Source: Kudoa neothunni (Eukaryota > Animalia > Cnidaria). From it: a DNA stretch of 64,000 bases. Each line of letters opens with the position of its first letter. The stretch's first letter is position 1. Shown in pieces: positions 35,206 to 44,471 of the stretch. The position numbers were made by a program, and so were the translations under genes. Location of the stretch: assembly GCA_964304625.1 (NCBI GenBank), contig OZ199838.1, positions 5,403,978-5,467,977 on the forward strand. The letters run 5' to 3'. The notes beneath the pieces were generated by a model. The model had not been told where the DNA came from and searched no databases. It saw nothing but the letters and a program-made list of their open reading frames with translations.

Positions 35206-38200
35206 TTAACTAAAGAATATAATTGGGTTGCCAGGCGAGCATTGTTCTTTAATGTTATCGTTAGAAGCAGTACCAATATCAACAACCTCTATGGAGGCCA
35301 CCTAAAAACCAAATTTAATAAACTTCAAACCCAGAAAAACCATATACCGAGAGAGATTTTATGAGATAGGGAAGTATTTCATTAAGAATTTGTTTCTCAT
35401 TGAACGATGTAGTCAGATTCAATGCATCGGGTCCTTCGGTTTGTTCGCAAGTCTAAAAATAATAACACCGTCAAAACTACACATTCCCCACAATTAAACA
35501 CCTTAATATACTGCACAAATGACATGACTTTATTCATTTGTTTGGAGCTGATACATTTAAGTATAGGGTCTTTTTTAATGTGAGCAACCAACTGTTTGTT
35601 ATCGGGGAAGCTGGTGGCAGAATTAGCTGCTTCATTATCAGTACGGTTGGACTGGATATGGTTGGTATGATAAAAATCGGCTAAAAATTCGATGATTTGA
35701 GTTTGCCAGTCGTTATATTTGTCAGTGGTGTAGATGATAGCTCGTTGAGCTTCTTTTTTATTTTTTAGACGAGCCCTAAAATTTCTGCTGGTAGTTTCAA
35801 TAAATCTCGATATATGAAGAAGATTGTGGTCGTATTTGGTGATAGCAGGCCAGCTTGCATTCATAATAGAGTCGCAGTTTTTGAGTTCATTTTTCAGTGA
35901 AAGCACTTCACGAAGTAGAGAGAAAATATATTCACAAATGTGAGGGCAGATTGGGGCAAGAACAATAGTTTGAATGTAAATAAAATGAATTAGCAGATTA
36001 ATATTTTCTTCGATTCCACTTTTGCTACAATATTCTCTATAAAGATCTTTTGAGTTTTGAAGTTGGTAGAAACCGCATTTAAGTGCCTCACGATAAAGCA
36101 TGGACTTATAGTTGTCATACGATTTAACAACAGCGTAGTTGATATCATTTTCAAAAAGCTTTTCGAAAATGTTAGTAAATGGCTCACATTTTGTTGGACA
36201 TTTTTTTGCGGTTTCGATAATTTCTTTTGACCACTCTAAAAACGTGTACAACCGAAGAACAGTGTTATCTGCGATTTTTTCAACAAAATTGGCATCTTCA
36301 ATAGTATCACCAGAATCAGCTAGAGTTAATCTCACCGCATCTGCACCGTATCTACCTATAGCCTCATCTAGCGTGAGAAAATTGCCAGTAGATTTTGACA
36401 TTTTTTCCGAATTCAACAATAGATGACCATTAGCACGCACACCTTTCGGCCATTTTGTCATATCCTCCGGCCAAATCGCAACATGATTGTAGAGATAATA
36501 TGTCAAATGGTTGGGAATGAGATCCTTTCCGGAAACTCTCAAGTCAACACCATACCAATATTGAAACTCATTTCGTAGTTTGTTGAGTTTGCTTTGATCG
36601 ATAGTACAATTTGTGGTGGGATAGGGCATATCTTTAAGAAATATATAATCCCAAACTTCGTTGGTGAGTTGATCAGCCGTGATACCGAGAGCATTGGCAT
36701 TCGAACCATCCAAAGTGTTTCCCTGGAGTAGGTGAGCAATAGTATAATAGCTCATATAAATGGTGGAATCAGACAACGATTCCACGAGATAGACTGGATC
36801 CCAAGGGAGTTTTGTGCCGAGACCAAAAGAACGGGCACAAGCATGCTCATGCAACCAGTATAATACTGCAAGGAAATTGTTTTTGGTTTCATCACAGTAG
36901 GTTTCCATTTGTTCAAGGCATTTGGTAGCTTTTGATTTCCACTCATTTTCACCATAATTAAGATACCACTGATCACACAATGCAACCACACATTCATCAC
37001 CCGATCTGGATATAATTCGTGATTCTGGTTCTTGATAAATTAAACAGTGACCTTCGTCTAGCATCTGCTTTTGTATGAGAGGTTTAGCATCTTTGACAAG
37101 CATATTTTTGTATCGGTTGGAGAAAACTATTTTCCCTTCGTAGAATGAACTTTTGTAAATGGTATCTTTGGCAGTGACCAATTTGTCGGTATCGTTTTGA
37201 CTCTGTATTTTGAGTTTTTCACATATCATCTTCGCACATAACTCTCCATAATCAGGAACCGATATAATTTGAACTGGTTCAAACAGCATACTCTCGTCCA
37301 CGCCAAATTTATCACGCAACGCTGGTTTGTTTTTGAGATCCACCAATGTGGCATAATCATCAGGCGAATCCGATGGAACTGACATCACAATTCCAGTACC
37401 TTTGTCTTGTTTGATTGTAAGCATAGGTAGTGCATATATTTGTTGATAATGAGCACAAGATGGAGTACTTATTTTGCTGCCGAACAACAAAGATCCCTTT
37501 ATTTCTCCTACAACGTTGTACTTTCCGATCATATCAGTAAGATTTTGATAAGACGCATTCCTGGCTGCTCTCCTAGTACTAACGTAATACACCTCATCAC
37601 CCTCACAACTTCTGTAAACCACATAATCAATATCTGGATGAAGCCAGCAGTTAGTAATCCCAAAAATGGTTTCAGGTCTTAGCGTTGCAGCCAGCAGAAA
37701 TACTTTTTTATTTTGAATCAGTTCATTGAGCAAAGAGTGCTGCTGGTGGTTAGCAAGTAAAGGAGCTTCACACAGACGAAGTTTGAAAACGGTATATTCT
37801 TGAGGACCGATCCCTTCGCCGCTAGCGCGATCATGATCCATACAGGGTTGGTTATCCTTTGGCGAAAAAATGGTGTAACGTTTTCCAAACTTGACAAATC
37901 CTAACTGTTTTAACTTCCAAAATTGCCATCGTACAAATGAGTCATAGAATGGATTGACGTCTGTGGTGATAAACGACCTCCTCCAATCGACCTACCAAAA
38001 TAAGAGATCATTATTTATTTCAGCTTCATTTAACTCACTTTTAAACCAAACTGTTTAAGATCGCTCATTGCGCATTTTGGGAAATATTTCAACCAATGCA
38101 ATGGATCAACAAATTTTCTTATTTCCTCATCATTCAATCCAAAACTTTTCATGATATTCCACTGATAATTTGCAGTACCTCCTTTGGCTGCAACTTTGCT

Positions 38201-41200
38201 CTTAACCTATCACATACAGTTAATAATTATGGAATGTAAACTGCTATAATCTATAATCACTTTGGTACCAGATGCTGGATTGTATGTAGGATCAACCACC
38301 TGTGCTGGGAACGTAGGAGGAAATCCAAACGTTTCCAATTCGTATTTTAATTTGTCCGCACATGCCTATTAGAAAACATAAAAGTTTATTCCCATAAACA
38401 TCTGTAATATTTTAATACGTCCAAATAATAACTCTAATAAATAAAGCTTCAAATTTATTCAGTTACAATGAGATTATAAAGGTAGACACACTAATCCCCC
38501 AAGGCAGAGCTTCTTAGGCGAGGATGTGAAAATTCGTTATGATTACTTAATACATAGGAAAGTTTCGAAATCAATCGAACCTTTCTCATTTCGCTAACTG
38601 CAATACATGCATCATTTTAAAGTTTTCTTCCTAAAGCATAGGCTAATAATTAGCATTTAATAGAATTAATCATAAATATTATTTATTCATTAATTTTTTT
38701 ATTATAAATAAACGCTGGAATAAGTACAATTACATTATTTGCTAAATATTAACAGATTGTAGGTAATATTTTCCGACACAACTAGTTTCTACAATATAAT
38801 CTAAAAATTAAGTAAATATACGTATACACCGTATTTATTCTAGCGTAACGCGCATCCCAATTTTGAATTCTATTTTAGCTAGAAAACTTTGGGTGTTAGA
38901 CTCAAATAAATGCGGTGATCGATAAAAAAATAAGGACAAATATCGAACATAGAACGCCATAATTATCAATGACGAGACTTACCCAATATAAATAAATAAT
39001 TTTGGATTGATTTTGAAGTTTTTCTAATTTCAATTTTTTTAAAGGCCGCCCAAATTAATCCTCTACGTACTGCGAACGAAAAAATTATCCACGTTTTAAC
39101 TTCTCCAAACACCGAATAAATTAAAAAAGTTAACCATATTTATTAATATATGCTAAATTTTGAAAGATATTTCAGTTTCCTTAATGTGTAAACGGCATTA
39201 CTGGCAGTGCAATGACGTAAAACTGTGTGAATATAAAAATAATCCAATGGCCCCAATTTTATCTAAATCAACGATTTCACTGATCTTGCATTGTAAATAA
39301 GCTTTGGGGATATCATTGAAAAAGAAAATATGATTGTTTACATGCGTCCCTGGACTGTATGTACTTTTTGGATAGAAAGCGACTATTTTGAATGGTATAA
39401 AATATTCGGGTGCCGCTATTTTTGACTATACTTAATATTTTATGGCCCCTAAGAACGAAACGGTGGGTCAGAAAGAATTGAATACAGCGGAGTTTACAAA
39501 ATTTAAGCTAAATACAGACTGTAAGTAAGAGTTGTTGAATTAAAAATTAACATCGCGTACGCGCGATGTCAATAGAATTAAAATTCTCGTACCAATAGCC
39601 TCTGCCGTAACATAAACACATGAGAACATATGATTCCTTGGTTAGAATAAACTATTCTCAATCATAAAATTTAATCAAAAGGAGATGACGTTATTAACAT
39701 AATTAGCTAAACGCTCAACTAATAAAAGAGTCTATTCCATATTTATCTGACCTTAACCTTAATGCGGTGTATTTACTGAAAATGAACTTTGCTTTAAATC
39801 TTAAGTATTTTTCTCTAATGAAGGGTTTTTATAGTATGGAAACAATTTGGCGATATAGAAACGCACATATTTTATAACACGAAGAAACTGGTAGACTTTA
39901 ATTAAATCTTTCGTAATTATCTTGTGGTAACTTCATCAAAATGCAGCGATCAAGATCATGATGTTAAAATATCTGCAAAAAATCTTTACGGAAATGTCCC
40001 CTTTCCCCCATTACGACTAAACAACGTTTTTAAAGCCCCTTCCTTATTTTTATGGATAGCAATTTAGAGAAGATTATTAAATTATGGTTAAATTTAACAA
40101 TAATTCTTCTACGCAATTTTGCAATAAAATTCGATAAAAAATTATAGTATTAAATATTTCGTCATGACTCTCCCTAAACAATTTCAAAATATTCACTTAT
40201 TTTTTTAAACATGCATGAAAAAAGCTGTAAACTTATAGATCTCGAATTCGTCATATCTATACCGGGTTTTGCGCCCAATTTCGGATTGCGCGACGATCAA
40301 ATTCGGATATTTTTGCGCCCGTTAGTAAACAGTGAAAACAAAAATGGTTTGATACGTGAAACACTCGAATGAAACAAGGAAGAGAGTGATTAAACTAGTT
40401 ATAAAACAGGGAAGATCACAAAAAGAGGTTGCAGAAGATCTAGATGTTCCAAAATCAACTGTGAACGATATCGTTGAAAGATTTCTAGCGAGAGATCCTT
40501 TTGAAAATTTGCCGCGAGGTGGAGCTCAAAGAGTTATTTTTAACGAAGAAATCAAGAGAAAATTGTTGGACTTGATTAACGATGATTGCACCTTAACTCT
40601 TGCATCGATGATTGAAAAATTATCATTAAATGTCAATCCCGCGACTGTCTCAAGATGGTTGACATCCATGAACATAACATTTAAAATGATAAGAACGATA
40701 CCGCTGAGTAGAAATTCCCATGATGTAAAGTTGGAGAGAAAAAAGTATGCTGAATGGTATACCCAACTTTCCATTACCACAAGATACGAAAATCTTATTT
40801 TTGTAGATGTAAGTCCCTTTTCCCTCTGAATGTTAAGAAACCACGGCAGGTCCTTAAGAGGCTCCACCCCTAATGCAGTAGTTCCGAGCAGCCGAAGAAA
40901 TAATGCCACAATGATATTGGCCATTAGCGGAAAAGGTCTTATCCATTGCGAGGCTATTTTTGGGTCAGTGAGCATTGAAATTTTTCAATCATTTTTAAAA
41001 AAGATAGAGGAAGCGATGGATAATATGAGATTCTATCATTCCAATGTTGAATTTTACGACACATTTTCTGGAGAAATACAGTATCTTCCAAGATATTCAC
41101 CATTTCTCAACCCTTGCGAAGAGGTATTCTCCTTAATTAAATCAAGAGTAAGAAGAAGTGATCCAATTAGAGGAAGAAATGATTTAATTGATAGAATGGA

Positions 41201-42495
41201 CAGTTCTGCTTCCTCGGTCACTGGATGTGAAATTATAAAATTTTTTGAACATTCGGAAACCTTTTTAGGTAAATGCCACTTAATGGAAGATGTGGCGCGA
41301 GATTGAAATATGCAACTAGTTATCTACGTGGCAGTAATCATAAAATTTTACATTTTAAACATTTGTTTTTATGCAGCGCTAAAATATCCGAATTTGATTG
41401 TCACCAATCCGAAATTGGGCGCAAAACCCGGTAGTAAACTCATAGAAAGATTTGGATTATATAAGCATCAAATAATTTCGTACTTATTTAACAAAATGAC
41501 AACATTTATGTCCATATAATTATTTGAAGATTCAAACTGACAATCTTTTAATAATTAGATAATGGATGATATTTGTCATAAAGTCACTCATTATTCTTAA
41601 TTTCTAGTGATTATTATGAGTCGTCTTATTCTTATCATAGAAGGATGGCATCCAATTAAAAAAAGAATAAAACGGAATTGAATATTAGAGTTTGATATGT
41701 AATAAGGATGAACTGCGTCGGAGTGAAAACCTACCTGAAATATTTTTCGGATAGTATTTAATTTTAATATTTCCCATTTACTTTTACAACTCCAAAAATT
41801 TATTAATCATACTTATCATAGATTTACAACAATAACTAAAACTCCAGCTGTTTAAAACAATGTAAAATCATAAAGCAGAGTTAACATTTTAAGGTAAAAA
41901 ACACTAAAAACTTTAGAGGGTTAAAATTAAATTTTATTTATTTTTATAACTATTAAAAAACTCTCAGTAAATTATTTCAATACCTTGATCGGCATGCCTG
42001 TGGCATGAAATCCAAATGGAAACAAACAATTTTTACCCCGAAGACGTTCAAATCCAACCGCAAATTCACACTATGATCGCGATATTAAAAACAAACTTCG
42101 AACTACATTACCTTAGTCAGTGAAAAACTGTGCCCTATGTGTAAACGCCCATTCATATATGGATATGGGAATGTTGCCATAAATTTATTCCTGCCGTAAA
42201 AAAATAAAACCATAAATGAATCACGCAGTTTGAATAATTTAAATACTTTTTTTCGCAAGCTTCGGTGGGAGCATCCACCTCAAATATTTTCTCTTCAGCC
42301 CATTTGCTCTGCATTCGGTCCTCAATGTTACGTAATATGTCAAGTTTGACATACGATTTTTTATCCAAATCTTCCATCTGTTAACAAAAATAATATAAAA
42401 TGTCATATATTCACTATGCTGCTTACTCTATTTTTGTAGCACAATTGACGAAATGATCCACGAGCAAATAAACTTTTGAGCAGACTTGTGCGCAT
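35206..42495 (-). CDS. LARS1: Leucyl-tRNA synthetase, cytosolic (eukaryal/archaeal) type; core starts at ATG 42377, putative upstream coding exon 42427-42495
   Basis: [15 protein letters not shown] (HIGH motif), [31 protein letters not shown], editing domain ATLRPET...[20 protein letters not shown], and C-terminus [14 protein letters not shown] 3.6-kb intron lies at about 38367-41983. Confidence 0.97.
38827..38917. mobile_element. Short Tc/mariner-type hairpin MITE in the LARS intron
   Basis: caccgtatttatt ... aaataaatgcggtg inverted ends. Confidence 0.5.
40262..41431 (+). mobile_element. Tc1/IS630-like transposon in the LARS intron; transposase about 40344-41306 with two in-frame TGA
   Basis: TA flanks; perfect 27-bp TIR ccgggttttgcgcccaatttcggattg, extending imperfectly to about 57 bp. 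HTH ([16 protein letters not shown]), IFVD, MDN and [16 protein letters not shown] motifs. Confidence 0.95.
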
Positions 42496-42521
42496 GCGAA
42501 CAAATAAACACGTTTTAATAT

Positions 42522-44471
42522 GGCAGTGGCTATTGCAACGGATCCGTTTAATCCGCATGCTCGGACTGTCTATTGCAACGGGAGGAAATAAATCGAAAAC
42601 TAACATGTCTATAAAAATTTCAATTTCGTTTTTATAATAAATGATTTTTTCGCCAAATAATTTCAAATTTTGGGGGAAATATAATATGGTGGAATTTTCA
42701 AAGTTGTTATTTAAAATTAAGTAACTTAATAATGTCATTTTGATTTGATAGATCGTAAGAATATTAAAAAAAACTTTCTAAGACAATAAACTTTCATAAT
42801 TGCAAAAATTTTATGTAAATCGTATGCTTTCTATAGTATGAATTACCACGCTCAGGAGTCCGCGCTATTACGTAAGACTTAGTTAACTAGTAGTACTGGT
42901 TCTTTCGTTGGTTAACATCCCTCTGATTCGATACATGCAATTATAGAGAATTATTAACACATTAATTAAAGTTTTTTTTTTCTCAAAATTTATAATATGA
43001 ATAATGTGTATTAATGTACAACGCATTGTATTTAAAGCTGTCTCAATCTATGAAATAAACACAAATCTATGATTTCGAGTTAGATTTATTTATACTATAT
43101 ATAGGACTTTAAAAATAGATTATTTGTTAAAGATATGGTAGTTTTTAAGGAATAATGTGTCATTTCCTTGATTCGATGTTACGTCGCAATAATTTGAGGG
43201 TAATGGGTAATAATTCTCTACATAAAAACAAAAATATGATTATCATAATAAAATCAAGATCCTTTTAAAACAGAGGTCGGCAACGACCGGCCCGCGGACC
43301 AAATTTGGCCCGGAGCTTTCCTCATCCGGCCCACAAGAGATGTCATTGATAAAGTTAATTTTTTTTGACGATGCTTATATAATTTCCCCAACTTTTAAAT
43401 TCGATCTCTTCAGCATATAAATAAGCTTAATAGCAATGTGAACTATGTTACTTAAGTATTATTCCCTCTTTTTAAACATAAGAGTGCTTAAAAAAATAAA
43501 GATTAAAATTTTTCCCCAAGCAAATTCCCTACTTATTTTTACTGATTGTACGATATTAGTTTTATTGTAGCTAATGGAAACATTTAATTATTTCTTTTTA
43601 CGATTTAGAACCATAATTTGACTATATAAAAGTTTAAATTTAGCACCAAAAATTTCAGGTAAATTATGAAATAAAAAATTGTATAAAACCAGTAATTCCC
43701 TCATAAAAATATATTCCTTTAAATTTCACAATATAAATTTACTAATCCAATTTTCAATTGTATTGTGAAAAATTTATTACATCTACTGGATTTAAATATA
43801 TTCTGGCCTGCCTCCTAGTTTGACATGATTATCCGGCCCGGCAACCTAATAGGGTTGCCGACCCCTGATCTAAAGTAAAGAGTGTTGAGCGTCCTAGAGG
43901 TGCTGCGCTTACGGTTGTTGACCTTCCTAGAAAAAGAAAGCAGGATGAATAATAAAACAATTAATAGATGGAAATCAAAAATTTTCTTCATGTTATTAAT
44001 GACTAAATAAATTGCGGTATAATAAAGCTAATTTGTATCTTTATATAGCGAAAAGATAGATCATTCAATATGTAGAAAATTAAGATCATGAAATAAAAAG
44101 ATCTAACATTTTGCGCGATATGTTAACAGTGCATTATTATTGTCTTTAGCATTATAGCGGTGCTTCATTCATGCGCAAGTCTGATGAATTTGCATTAGTA
44201 GATTTGGGTCTTTAATTGAAACAATTTATATTACTCTGAATTATGGAAAAGATAATCACGTTTGTAAATGATAAATCGCTAATTAAGGACTTAAAAATAA
44301 TTTTTAACCTCTGAATTCATTGCCATAAAATGTGAAAATTTGTTATCTTGGATTTCTTTTATAATAGTTTAACTTTTTGGCGAAAAAATCATTTATTATG
44401 AAAACGAAATTGAAATTTTGATAGACATGCTAGTTTTCGAGTTATATCCTCCCGTTGCAATAGCCACTGCC
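42522..44471. mobile_element. Non-autonomous long-TIR element with a probable 9-bp TSD (Mutator- or Merlin-like)
   Basis: Perfect 20-nt terminal TIR ggcagtggctattgcaacgg plus about 90 nt of further inverted similarity; flanks ttttaatat / ttttgttat. Confidence 0.8.
43271..43867. mobile_element. hAT (Charlie/Buster-like) MITE nested in the long-TIR element
   Basis: cagaggtcggcaac ... gttgccgacccctg TIRs with subterminal cggccc repeats. Confidence 0.85.

What the first reader, a model, noticed from the sequence alone, without database searches (positions are those of the whole stretch)
42378..42495. Hidden in-frame upstream exon adds a mitochondrial-presequence-like peptide to cytosolic LeuRS
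Seen (minus strand): ATG at 42495 opens a 69-nt exon encoding [23 protein letters not shown] (4 R, 2 K, no D/E). A GTAAGC...TTAACAG intron (42378-42426) joins it in phase 0 exactly to the ATG of MEDLDKK. Known: such composition is typical of mitochondrial presequences. Animals normally use a separate bacterial-type LARS2, but cnidarians that lost most mt-tRNAs also lost many mitochondrial synthetases. Inference: one gene supplies both compartments through alternative starts, charging imported tRNA-Leu. Caveat: the ATG lies within a GCGCATGCG promoter-like motif, so the exon could be plain 5'UTR.
Basis: partly seen in the sequence, partly recalled or inferred. Interest (0 to 1): 0.8.

Follow-up and report, generated by a model that had tools for sequence, protein, structure and literature searches.

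The report
Presequence mini-exon on Kudoa LeuRS
A fish parasite (a Kudoa-type myxozoan) whose mitochondria have no tRNA genes and no mitochondrial leucyl-tRNA synthetase very probably sends its one cytosolic-type enzyme into mitochondria by a short extra first exon; the principle is already known from other cnidarians and fungi, and no RNA data could be obtained.

Summary
On the minus strand, ATG 42495 opens a 69-nt stop-free exon. A 49-nt GT..AG intron (42426-42378) joins it in phase 0 to the canonical LeuRS ATG at 42377.

- The genome (Kudoa-type myxozoan, 40 Mb) has no bacterial-type LARS2.
- Its 18-kb mitochondrial contig encodes COX1 but no tRNA found by ARAGORN.
- Every amino acid I checked has one synthetase locus, except Phe, which keeps a mitochondrial-type PheRS.
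- A related organism's LeuRS locus has the same layout: an ATG in the same motif, 22 stop-free codons and an in-frame 34-nt intron.
- CysRS, TrpRS, ValRS and SerRS of this genome carry similar 19-27-residue basic, acid-free extensions before their canonical Met.
- Every first ATG has a pyrimidine at -3 and every second ATG an A. This is the weak-AUG/strong-AUG leaky-scanning design known from fungal synthetases.

The caveat also holds. The ATG sits in an NRF1-like site that is about 15-fold enriched in the genome, and a roughly 2-kb transposon ends 26 nt upstream.

My confidence is about 0.65. I class it as a new member of a known kind. The scan had flagged a similar hidden exon on ThrRS elsewhere in this genome.

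The parts
42489..42499 (-). NRF1-like site TCGCATGCGCA (9 of 10 bases of the palindrome GCGCATGCGC) that contains the upstream ATG (42495-42493)
   Evidence: 56 genomic copies against 2 for the reversed control; the palindrome occurs 214 times against 14; an NRF1 DNA-binding-domain gene is present.
42427..42495 (-). Proposed coding exon 1: 23 codons, 6 Lys/Arg, no Asp/Glu. It is a presequence-like peptide. The first ATG is in weak context (C at -3, C at +4).
   Evidence: GC 0.38, like the neighbouring exons.
42378..42426 (-). Proposed intron 1: 49 nt, GTAAGC donor, T-rich tract, AACAG acceptor, phase 0
   Evidence: neighbouring introns are 56 and 41 nt; GC 0.24, like the neighbouring introns.
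42247..42377 (-). Exon 2 with the canonical LeuRS start ATG at 42377 (A at -3 and G at +4 in the spliced mRNA)
   Evidence: (aligns from residue 1 of Lingula LeuRS).
42112..42190 (-). Exon 3 with the HIGH signature of class I synthetases
41981..42070 (-). Exon 4. It is followed by an unusually long 3.6-kb intron (41980-38366).
35400..37991 (-). Large exon (864 codons) with the catalytic core, KMSKS (36404-36390) and the anticodon-binding domain. It is archaeal/eukaryotic cytosolic-type LeuRS.
   Evidence: (TIGR00395 750.8 bits, over its cut-off; TIGR00396 25.7 bits).
42496..42521 (-). 26-nt spacer between the transposon end and the upstream ATG. It is the only unique DNA directly upstream of that ATG.
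42522..44471 (.). About 1.95-kb transposon with terminal inverted repeats (42522-42662 and 44371-44471). The two CCGTTGCAATAG boxes upstream of LeuRS belong to its terminal repeat.
   Evidence: (40 or more copies, up to 99% identical).

Best explanation
The window holds the only leucyl-tRNA synthetase gene of a Kudoa-type myxozoan, and it is of the cytosolic (archaeal/eukaryotic) type. Its first 69 coding bases (42495-42427) form a mini-exon that encodes a 23-residue basic, acid-free mitochondrial presequence. A 49-nt intron splices it in frame onto the canonical start codon at 42377.

mRNAs that include the upstream AUG would give two proteins. The upstream AUG lies inside an NRF1-like promoter palindrome and therefore has a poor context (C at -3, C at +4). 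Some ribosomes start there and make the presequence-bearing form, which is imported into mitochondria to charge imported tRNA-Leu. Others scan past to the strong AUG (A at -3, G at +4) and make the cytosolic enzyme. Transcripts that start downstream of the motif would give the cytosolic form only.

Shown here: the sequence layout, its conservation in one relative, the absence of LARS2 and of ARAGORN-detectable mitochondrial tRNA genes, and parallel extensions on other synthetases.

Inferred: transcription of the upstream ATG, splicing, leaky scanning and import.
For: 1. The layout is exact. Exon and intron composition and intron size match the neighbouring true exons and introns.
2. Need. No TIGR00396 (LARS2-type) match rises above noise in 40.26 Mb. 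The gene itself is leuS_arch type. Contig C4 is mitochondrial: COX1 at 242 bits with 8 in-frame TGA. ARAGORN finds no tRNA on it. The literature reports no credible mt-tRNA genes in Kudoa (PMC5633667, PMC4492933).
3. Conservation. The Logan contig L006 has 65% identity in the large exon and the same intron 2 and 3 positions. It has the same motif with an ATG, 22 stop-free codons (6 Lys/Arg, no acid) and a 34-nt intron in frame. That size matches that genome's own 31-34-nt introns. Only 4.9% of shuffles allow any such path there.
4. Family pattern in this genome. CysRS, TrpRS, ValRS and SerRS have contiguous 19-27-codon extensions before their canonical Met. An Asn-type enzyme has a 24-codon extension. 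All have 4 or more Lys/Arg and no Asp/Glu. The background rate for that composition is 10.7%, and the canonical N-termini carry 1-6 acids.
5. The first ATG of Leu, Cys, Trp and Val lies in the same CGCATGC core. The -3 base is C, C, C, C, C, T for the first ATGs and A in 6 of 6 second ATGs.
6. Negative control. Cytosolic PheRS-alpha has no extension, and a mitochondrial-type PheRS is kept.
7. Hydra, Pocillopora and Montipora LeuRS isoforms annotated by NCBI carry 29-35-residue extensions before the same canonical Met.
Against:
- The ATG is dictated by a regulatory motif that is enriched genome-wide. At most other copies it opens only short frames (median 9-10 codons). At one gene (L052) it would form a 30-codon upstream ORF. 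The motif can therefore lie outside transcripts, or its ATG can be non-functional.
- A transposon up to 99% identical to other copies ends 26 nt upstream. A start site upstream of the ATG must lie in those 26 nt or inside the transposon.
- For this locus alone the frame argument is weak: 31% of shuffles allow a path.
- No trained presequence predictor was available.
- In Hydra and corals the extension is contiguous with the Met, not a separate exon, so the intron layout is not ancestral.
- TyrRS, LysRS, AlaRS and IleRS show no contiguous extension.
Confidence: 0.65

Rival explanations
1. The 69 bases are promoter or untranslated leader only. Transcription starts at or downstream of the NRF1-like site, so the ATG at 42495 is never in the mRNA, or lies too close to the cap to be used. 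The intron, if spliced, is a leader intron. Mitochondrial leucylation would then be met some other way, for instance by import of already charged tRNA as proposed for apicomplexans (recalled, not checked), or by an internal targeting signal.
For: - The ATG is an obligatory part of a motif that is about 15-fold enriched genome-wide. Its ATG mostly opens very short frames elsewhere.
- L052 shows the motif about 100 nt upstream of a separate main ORF.
- A transposon sits 26 nt upstream, and a TATA-like run at 42520-42513 would place initiation near 42490 (the spacing rule is from general knowledge).
- 31% of shuffles give an in-frame path.
Against: - It does not explain why the motif ATG is in frame and stop-free up to the canonical Met in LeuRS of two species and in CysRS, TrpRS and ValRS.
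- It does not explain why all these peptides are basic and acid-free while the canonical N-termini are acidic.
- It does not explain why PheRS-alpha, whose mitochondrial counterpart is kept, lacks such a peptide.
Confidence: 0.23
2. The upstream ATG is transcribed and translated, but the extension is a tolerated by-product of having an ATG inside a promoter-proximal motif. Selection only keeps it in frame and stop-free to avoid a harmful upstream ORF. It does not target the enzyme to mitochondria.
For: The motif forces an ATG. At two other motif copies (L019, L047) the motif ATG lies in frame just 3 codons before another Met.
Against: - Frame-keeping alone does not predict the consistent composition of 4-6 Lys/Arg and no Asp/Glu in six or seven peptides. 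That composition has a 10.7% background rate each.
- It does not explain SerRS, whose extension has no motif.
- The genome needs a mitochondrial LeuRS activity and has no other candidate.
Confidence: 0.07
3. The intron is not removed. The ATG opens a 30-codon upstream ORF (42495 to the stop inside 42426-42378) that damps LeuRS translation.
For: The unspliced frame ends 7 codons after the proposed donor, before the main ATG. Upstream ORFs are common regulators.
Against: - The donor is GTAAGC. The T-rich tract, the AG abutting the ATG, the 49-nt length and the low GC all match this gene's true introns.
- The relative's version scales to that genome's 31-34-nt A-rich introns.
Confidence: 0.05

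Closest known systems
Dual-AUG, dual-localised aminoacyl-tRNA synthetases of Cryptococcus and Neurospora (Wallace et al. 2020, PMC7049704, read)
   Same: A single-copy synthetase gene. A leaky, weak-context first AUG, then a mitochondrial targeting sequence, then a strong-context in-frame AUG at the cytosolic start. Several synthetases of one genome share the design.
   Different: - In the fungi the design is supported by start-site, RNA-seq and ribosome profiling data. Here only sequence supports it.
- In Kudoa LeuRS a 49-nt intron separates the two AUGs.
- The weak context here comes from an NRF1-like palindrome that contains the AUG.
Loss of mitochondrial synthetases with predicted import of cytosolic ones in Cnidaria and Ctenophora (Haen et al. 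2010; Pett and Lavrov 2015, PMC4558845)
   Same: Mitochondrial tRNA genes and mitochondrial synthetases are lost together. Mitochondrial PheRS is kept. Cytosolic enzymes are assumed to be imported. Hydra and coral LeuRS isoforms carry N-terminal extensions.
   Different: - Those studies sampled Nematostella, Hydra, Aurelia and Gorgonia, not myxozoans.
- They report mitochondrial TrpRS as kept. Here only one TrpRS locus, of cytosolic type, was found.
- In Hydra and Pocillopora the extension is in the same exon as the canonical Met.
Trypanosoma brucei IleRS, dual targeting by alternative trans-splicing (PMC3273800; title and abstract seen)
   Same: One gene serves both compartments in an organism without mitochondrial tRNA genes. 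RNA-level choice decides whether a presequence-coding 5' segment is in the mRNA.
   Different: Trypanosomes use alternative spliced-leader acceptor sites. Here the choice would be made by start site and/or leaky scanning, with an ordinary cis-spliced intron.
TISU element of mammalian short-leader mRNAs (recalled from memory, not checked here)
   Same: A promoter-proximal motif that contains the ATG and acts in both transcription and translation initiation. It is enriched in mitochondrial and housekeeping genes.
   Different: TISU has a different sequence and factor (YY1) and drives efficient, not leaky, initiation. The dual role of the Kudoa motif is inferred only.

Membership tests
Cytosolic (archaeal/eukaryotic-type) leucyl-tRNA synthetase, LARS1 | Match to the leuS_arch equivalog above its curated cut-off, and not to leuS_bact | tested here: met
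   TIGR00395 scores 750.8 bits (cut-off 648.5) on the large exon alone. TIGR00396 scores 25.7 bits.
Cytosolic (archaeal/eukaryotic-type) leucyl-tRNA synthetase, LARS1 | Class I signatures HIGH and KMSKS | tested here: met
   HIGH is in exon 3 (42112-42190) and KMSKS is at 36404-36390.
Cytosolic (archaeal/eukaryotic-type) leucyl-tRNA synthetase, LARS1 | N-terminus collinear with animal LARS1 from the canonical Met | tested here: met
   the tblastn alignment starts at residue 1 of Lingula LeuRS at window 42377.
Bacterial-type mitochondrial LeuRS, LARS2 | A gene matching leuS_bact (TIGR00396) anywhere in the genome | tested here: not met
   the best match is 28.4 bits against a cut-off of 548.4, and it is the cytosolic LeuRS itself. 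The other matches are the IleRS and ValRS loci.
Dual-AUG dual-localised synthetase | Single gene for the amino acid, with no separate organellar paralogue | tested here: met
Dual-AUG dual-localised synthetase | Upstream in-frame AUG in weak context and downstream AUG in strong context | tested here: met
   C at -3 and C at +4 for the first AUG, against A at -3 and G at +4 for the second. The same holds in five other cases.
Dual-AUG dual-localised synthetase | The peptide between the AUGs is predicted to be a mitochondrial targeting sequence | tested here: inconclusive
   measured composition only (6 Lys/Arg, no acid, 4 Ser/Thr; about 2% of background). The hydrophobic moment of 0.53 is unremarkable. 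No trained predictor was available, and the joined N-terminus was not sent to any tool.
Dual-AUG dual-localised synthetase | Transcripts contain the upstream AUG, and both starts are used | not testable with these tools
Dual-AUG dual-localised synthetase | The long isoform localises to mitochondria | not testable with these tools
   This needs a reporter-fusion or fractionation experiment.
NRF1/EWG binding site | Palindrome GCGCATGCGC, over-represented in the genome, and a cognate factor encoded | tested here: met
   The LeuRS site matches 9 of 10 bases. The 11-mer occurs 56 times against 2 and the palindrome 214 times against 14. PF10491 matches at 184 and 83 bits at C2:4313831-4314551. Binding itself was not tested.

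The most novel reading that the evidence does not exclude
In Kudoa the NRF1-type palindrome does two jobs. As DNA it is a promoter element near the start site. As RNA its obligatory AUG, locked into a poor Kozak context by the motif itself, is the leaky start codon of the mitochondrial isoforms of at least four synthetases (Leu, Cys, Trp, Val). The factor that controls mitochondrial biogenesis genes, and the choice of start site around its own binding site, would then set the mitochondrial to cytosolic ratio of the translation machinery. I found no description of such a motif-embedded dual-targeting switch.
Probability: 0.25. Interest if true: 0.65.

Novelty: new member of a known kind. Interest (0 to 1): 0.45.

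Why it matters
Myxozoans have the fastest-evolving and among the most reduced animal mitochondrial genomes, with no tRNA genes. How their mitochondria translate is therefore an open practical question.

This locus, together with the census made here, suggests that Kudoa follows the cnidarian route to its end. Every amino acid I checked has one synthetase gene, only mitochondrial PheRS is kept as a separate enzyme, and short presequences are bolted onto cytosolic enzymes.

It yields a concrete, testable list of dual-start genes and a candidate regulatory motif. It also sharpens one puzzle: how UGA is read as Trp without a mitochondrial tRNA-Trp or a mitochondrial TrpRS.

For annotation, it warns that gene models starting at the canonical Met will miss these mini-exons.

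Tried and rejected
- **Closer relatives.**
  - A word search with the 74-residue exon-2 ORF found nothing.
  - A search with the SerRS first-exon ORF found only distant animals. It did confirm that their proteins start at the second Met.
  - The large-exon search gave one relative at 65% identity and nothing closer. No dN/dS test was therefore possible.
- **Upstream boxes.** I first took the two CCGTTGCAATAG boxes upstream of the ATG for LeuRS promoter elements. I rejected this because they are part of the terminal inverted repeat of a dispersed transposon.
- **Ancestral intron.** I considered that the intron before the canonical ATG might be ancestral to cnidarians. I rejected this because Hydra and Pocillopora have the extension and the Met in one exon.
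- **Motif ATG as a general start.** I considered that the motif ATG is generally a start codon. It is not: most copies open frames of about 10 codons.
- **Literature.**
  - A search for the palindrome together with start codons gave nothing relevant.
  - No paper in the library describes synthetase targeting in myxozoans.
- **Joined model.** Exons were searched singly by reference, and joins were made only inside scripts to test reading frames.
- **Hidden exons on other synthetases.** I scanned ThrRS and inspected the sequence upstream of the TyrRS, LysRS, AlaRS and IleRS starts. I left this open, because the path search is too permissive, as the ThrRS scan shows.

Full report
**What is there**

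The minus strand of the window carries a LeuRS gene running from about 42495 down to about 35200.

The large exon 37991-35400 (864 codons) matches the tRNA-synt_1 and anticodon-binding families. It matches the archaeal/eukaryotic LeuRS equivalog TIGR00395 at 750.8 bits, above its cut-off, against 25.7 bits for the bacterial/mitochondrial type. HIGH lies in exon 3 and KMSKS at 36404-36390.

The canonical start is the ATG at 42377. A tblastn alignment with Lingula LeuRS begins there at residue 1.

- The ATG is at 42495.
- 23 stop-free codons run to 42427, with 4 Arg, 2 Lys and no Asp/Glu.
- A 49-nt intron, GTAAGC...AACAG, spans 42426-42378.
- Joining to 42377 is phase 0.

**Organism and need**

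Earlier notes of this scan call the genome a Kudoa-type myxozoan. I did not test the species name.

The assembly is 40.26 Mb in four contigs. The fourth contig, 18,219 bp, is mitochondrial:
- It carries COX1 at 242 bits with 8 in-frame TGA.
- ARAGORN finds no tRNA gene on it.
- This agrees with the literature on Kudoa (PMC5633667; PMC4492933).

A six-frame search with the LARS2-type model TIGR00396 finds nothing but weak echoes of the cytosolic LeuRS, IleRS and ValRS loci.

The same kind of search finds a mitochondrial-type PheRS, whose best NCBIfam hit is pheS_mito. An organellar enzyme would therefore have been seen.

Family scans give the following locus counts:

| Amino acid(s) | Loci found |
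|---|---|
| Leu, Ile, Val, Met, Cys, Trp, Tyr, Arg, Gln, Glu-Pro, Ala, Ser, Thr | one each |
| Asp, Asn, Lys | three in total |
| Phe | one cytosolic alpha subunit plus one mitochondrial-type |

GlyRS and HisRS were not looked for separately.

This is the cnidarian pattern of Haen et al. 2010 as summarised in PMC4558845. One difference is that no separate mitochondrial TrpRS appeared.

**Is the mini-exon more than chance?**

For this locus alone the evidence is only moderate:
- 31% of shuffles of the 118 nt allow some in-frame GT..AG path. 2% do so if the acceptor must abut the ATG.
- About 2% of stop-free 23-codon ATG starts in this genome are acid-free with 6 or more Lys/Arg.
- Exon 1 has GC 0.38 and intron 1 has GC 0.24. 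Neighbouring exons are at 0.37-0.42 and neighbouring introns at 0.27-0.32.
- The 49-nt length sits between introns 2 (56 nt) and 3 (41 nt).

**Relative**

The best database relative of the large exon (65% identity; all other animals are at or below 53%) lies on a 4.2-kb genomic Logan contig of 21% GC, L006.
- Introns 2 and 3 are at the same positions, at 34 and 31 nt.
- 100 nt upstream of its canonical ATG sits the same motif with an ATG.
- That ATG is followed by 22 stop-free codons (6 Lys/Arg, no acid) and a 34-nt A-rich GT..AG interval that restores the frame exactly at the ATG.
- Only 4.9% of shuffles allow any path there, and 0.3% allow one with an abutting acceptor.
- Beyond Met-Arg the two peptides share little sequence, as is usual for presequences.

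**Family pattern**

This is the strongest evidence. In the same genome, four synthetases carry 19-27-codon extensions that run without any intron into their canonical Met:

| Enzyme | Locus |
|---|---|
| CysRS | L055, C3:5908070 |
| TrpRS | L063 |
| ValRS | L004 |
| SerRS | L078 |

An Asn-type enzyme (L075) has a 24-codon extension.

- Identities were checked with NCBIfam and Pfam.
- The SerRS canonical start is confirmed by 33 animal homologues, most of which begin at that Met.
- All extensions have 4-6 Lys/Arg and no Asp/Glu. The canonical N-termini have 1-6 acids.
- The background rate for such composition is 10.7% per peptide.
- Cytosolic PheRS-alpha, whose mitochondrial counterpart is retained, has no extension. 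It has an in-frame stop 8 codons upstream.
- TyrRS, LysRS, AlaRS and IleRS show no contiguous extension. They may use hidden exons or non-AUG starts, or none.
I found a GTAAGA donor after a 36-codon basic frame that can join in frame 9 nt before the canonical ATG. The path search is permissive, however.

**The motif**

The first ATG of LeuRS (both species), CysRS, TrpRS and ValRS lies in a CGCATGC core.
- TCGCATGCGCA occurs 56 times in the genome against 2 for the reversed control.
- The palindrome GCGCATGCGC occurs 214 times against 14.
- A clear NRF1 DNA-binding-domain gene is present.

At most other copies its ATG opens only about 10 codons. At L052 it would form an upstream ORF.

The motif fixes C at -3 and C at +4, a poor initiation context. 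All six second ATGs have A at -3.

That is the weak-AUG, targeting-sequence, strong-AUG design shown experimentally for many synthetases of Cryptococcus and predicted for Neurospora (PMC7049704).

If the motif ATG were never transcribed, nothing would keep it in frame and stop-free in four genes and two species.

**Complication**

The sequence upstream of 42521 is not a LeuRS promoter. It is the terminal inverted repeat of a roughly 1.95-kb transposon (42522-44471) with 40 or more copies, up to 99% identical.
- Only 26 nt of unique DNA separate the transposon from the ATG.
- The reading frame stays open for 94 codons back through the repeat.
- A start site that includes the ATG must lie in those 26 nt or inside the transposon.
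- This lowers my confidence for this particular allele.

**Other cnidarians**

NCBI-annotated LeuRS isoforms of Hydra, Pocillopora and Montipora have 29-35-residue extensions before the same Met. These are basic and almost acid-free (0, 1 and 2 Asp/Glu). In Hydra and Pocillopora the extension is encoded in the same exon as the Met. The function looks shared, but the Kudoa intron is a lineage feature.

**Limits**

- No trained presequence predictor was available.
Joins were made only in scripts for frame tests.

**Verdict**

- It is a new member of a known kind.
- The motif-embedded start codon is the one possibly new twist.

Noticed in passing
window 42522-44471: A transposon of about 1.95 kb with terminal inverted repeats (42522-42662 and 44371-44471; the left repeat has an internal 40-bp duplication). 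The genome holds 40 or more copies of the repeat, up to 99% identical, some as inverted pairs 2-4 kb apart. One copy lies about 930 nt upstream of the ThrRS presequence-like exon. I saw no clear target-site duplication.
   Followed up: partly
window 43264-43874: A GC-rich foldback pair (21-nt arms, 86% complementary, 569 nt apart) nested inside the transposon. It looks like a second small inverted-repeat element.
   Followed up: no
window 38366-41980: One LeuRS intron is 3.6 kb, whereas its neighbours are 41-56 nt. It holds two adjacent plus-strand ORFs (40356-40829 and 40830-41306) that read like the helix-turn-helix and DDE halves of a Tc1/mariner-type transposase split by a stop. I did not run them against Pfam.
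   Followed up: partly
G000:C4 (18,219 bp, loci L093 and L104) and TrpRS locus L063 (G000:C1:15838351-15841524): Mitochondrial COX1 has 8 in-frame TGA codons. There is no mitochondrial tRNA gene and only one TrpRS locus, of cytosolic type, with a presequence-like extension. How UGA is decoded there is unexplained.
   Followed up: no
G000 genome-wide; NRF1-like gene at G000:C2:4313831-4314551 (L106, L107): GCGCATGCGC occurs 214 times against 14 for the reversed control in a 30% GC genome, and an NRF1 DNA-binding-domain homologue is encoded. This is a candidate master promoter motif for housekeeping and mitochondrial genes.
   Followed up: partly
L015, L020, L022, L026-L028, L035-L037, L041, L054 (G000 C1, C2, C3): About a dozen of the 56 copies of the 11-mer motif share about 30 nt of identical flank on both sides. 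They appear to be members of a small dispersed repeat that carries the motif.
   Followed up: no
L047 (G000:C2:11318663-11320673, minus strand): A 69-codon first exon starts at the motif ATG. It begins with a basic stretch, then weakly matches the RF-1 peptidyl-tRNA hydrolase domain (E 0.0013). It may be a mitochondrial release-factor-family protein with an altered GGQ region.
   Followed up: partly
L067 (G000:C1:13356280-13359480, minus strand): A mitochondrial-type PheRS is retained (best NCBIfam hit pheS_mito), with a long basic N-terminal region. It is the only organellar-type synthetase I found.
   Followed up: partly
L105:1224-1428 (G000:C1:14762723-14762927): Upstream of ThrRS, a 36-codon basic frame ends at a GTAAGA donor and can be joined in frame through an 88-nt interval to 9 nt before the canonical ATG. 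This parallels the LeuRS mini-exon.
   Followed up: partly
window 42496-42777, minus strand: The reading frame of ATG 42495 stays open for 94 codons upstream, through the transposon repeat. It contains further in-frame ATGs, one of them inside the repeat's own GCATGCG site. Transcripts that start in the transposon could encode an even longer basic leader.
   Followed up: no
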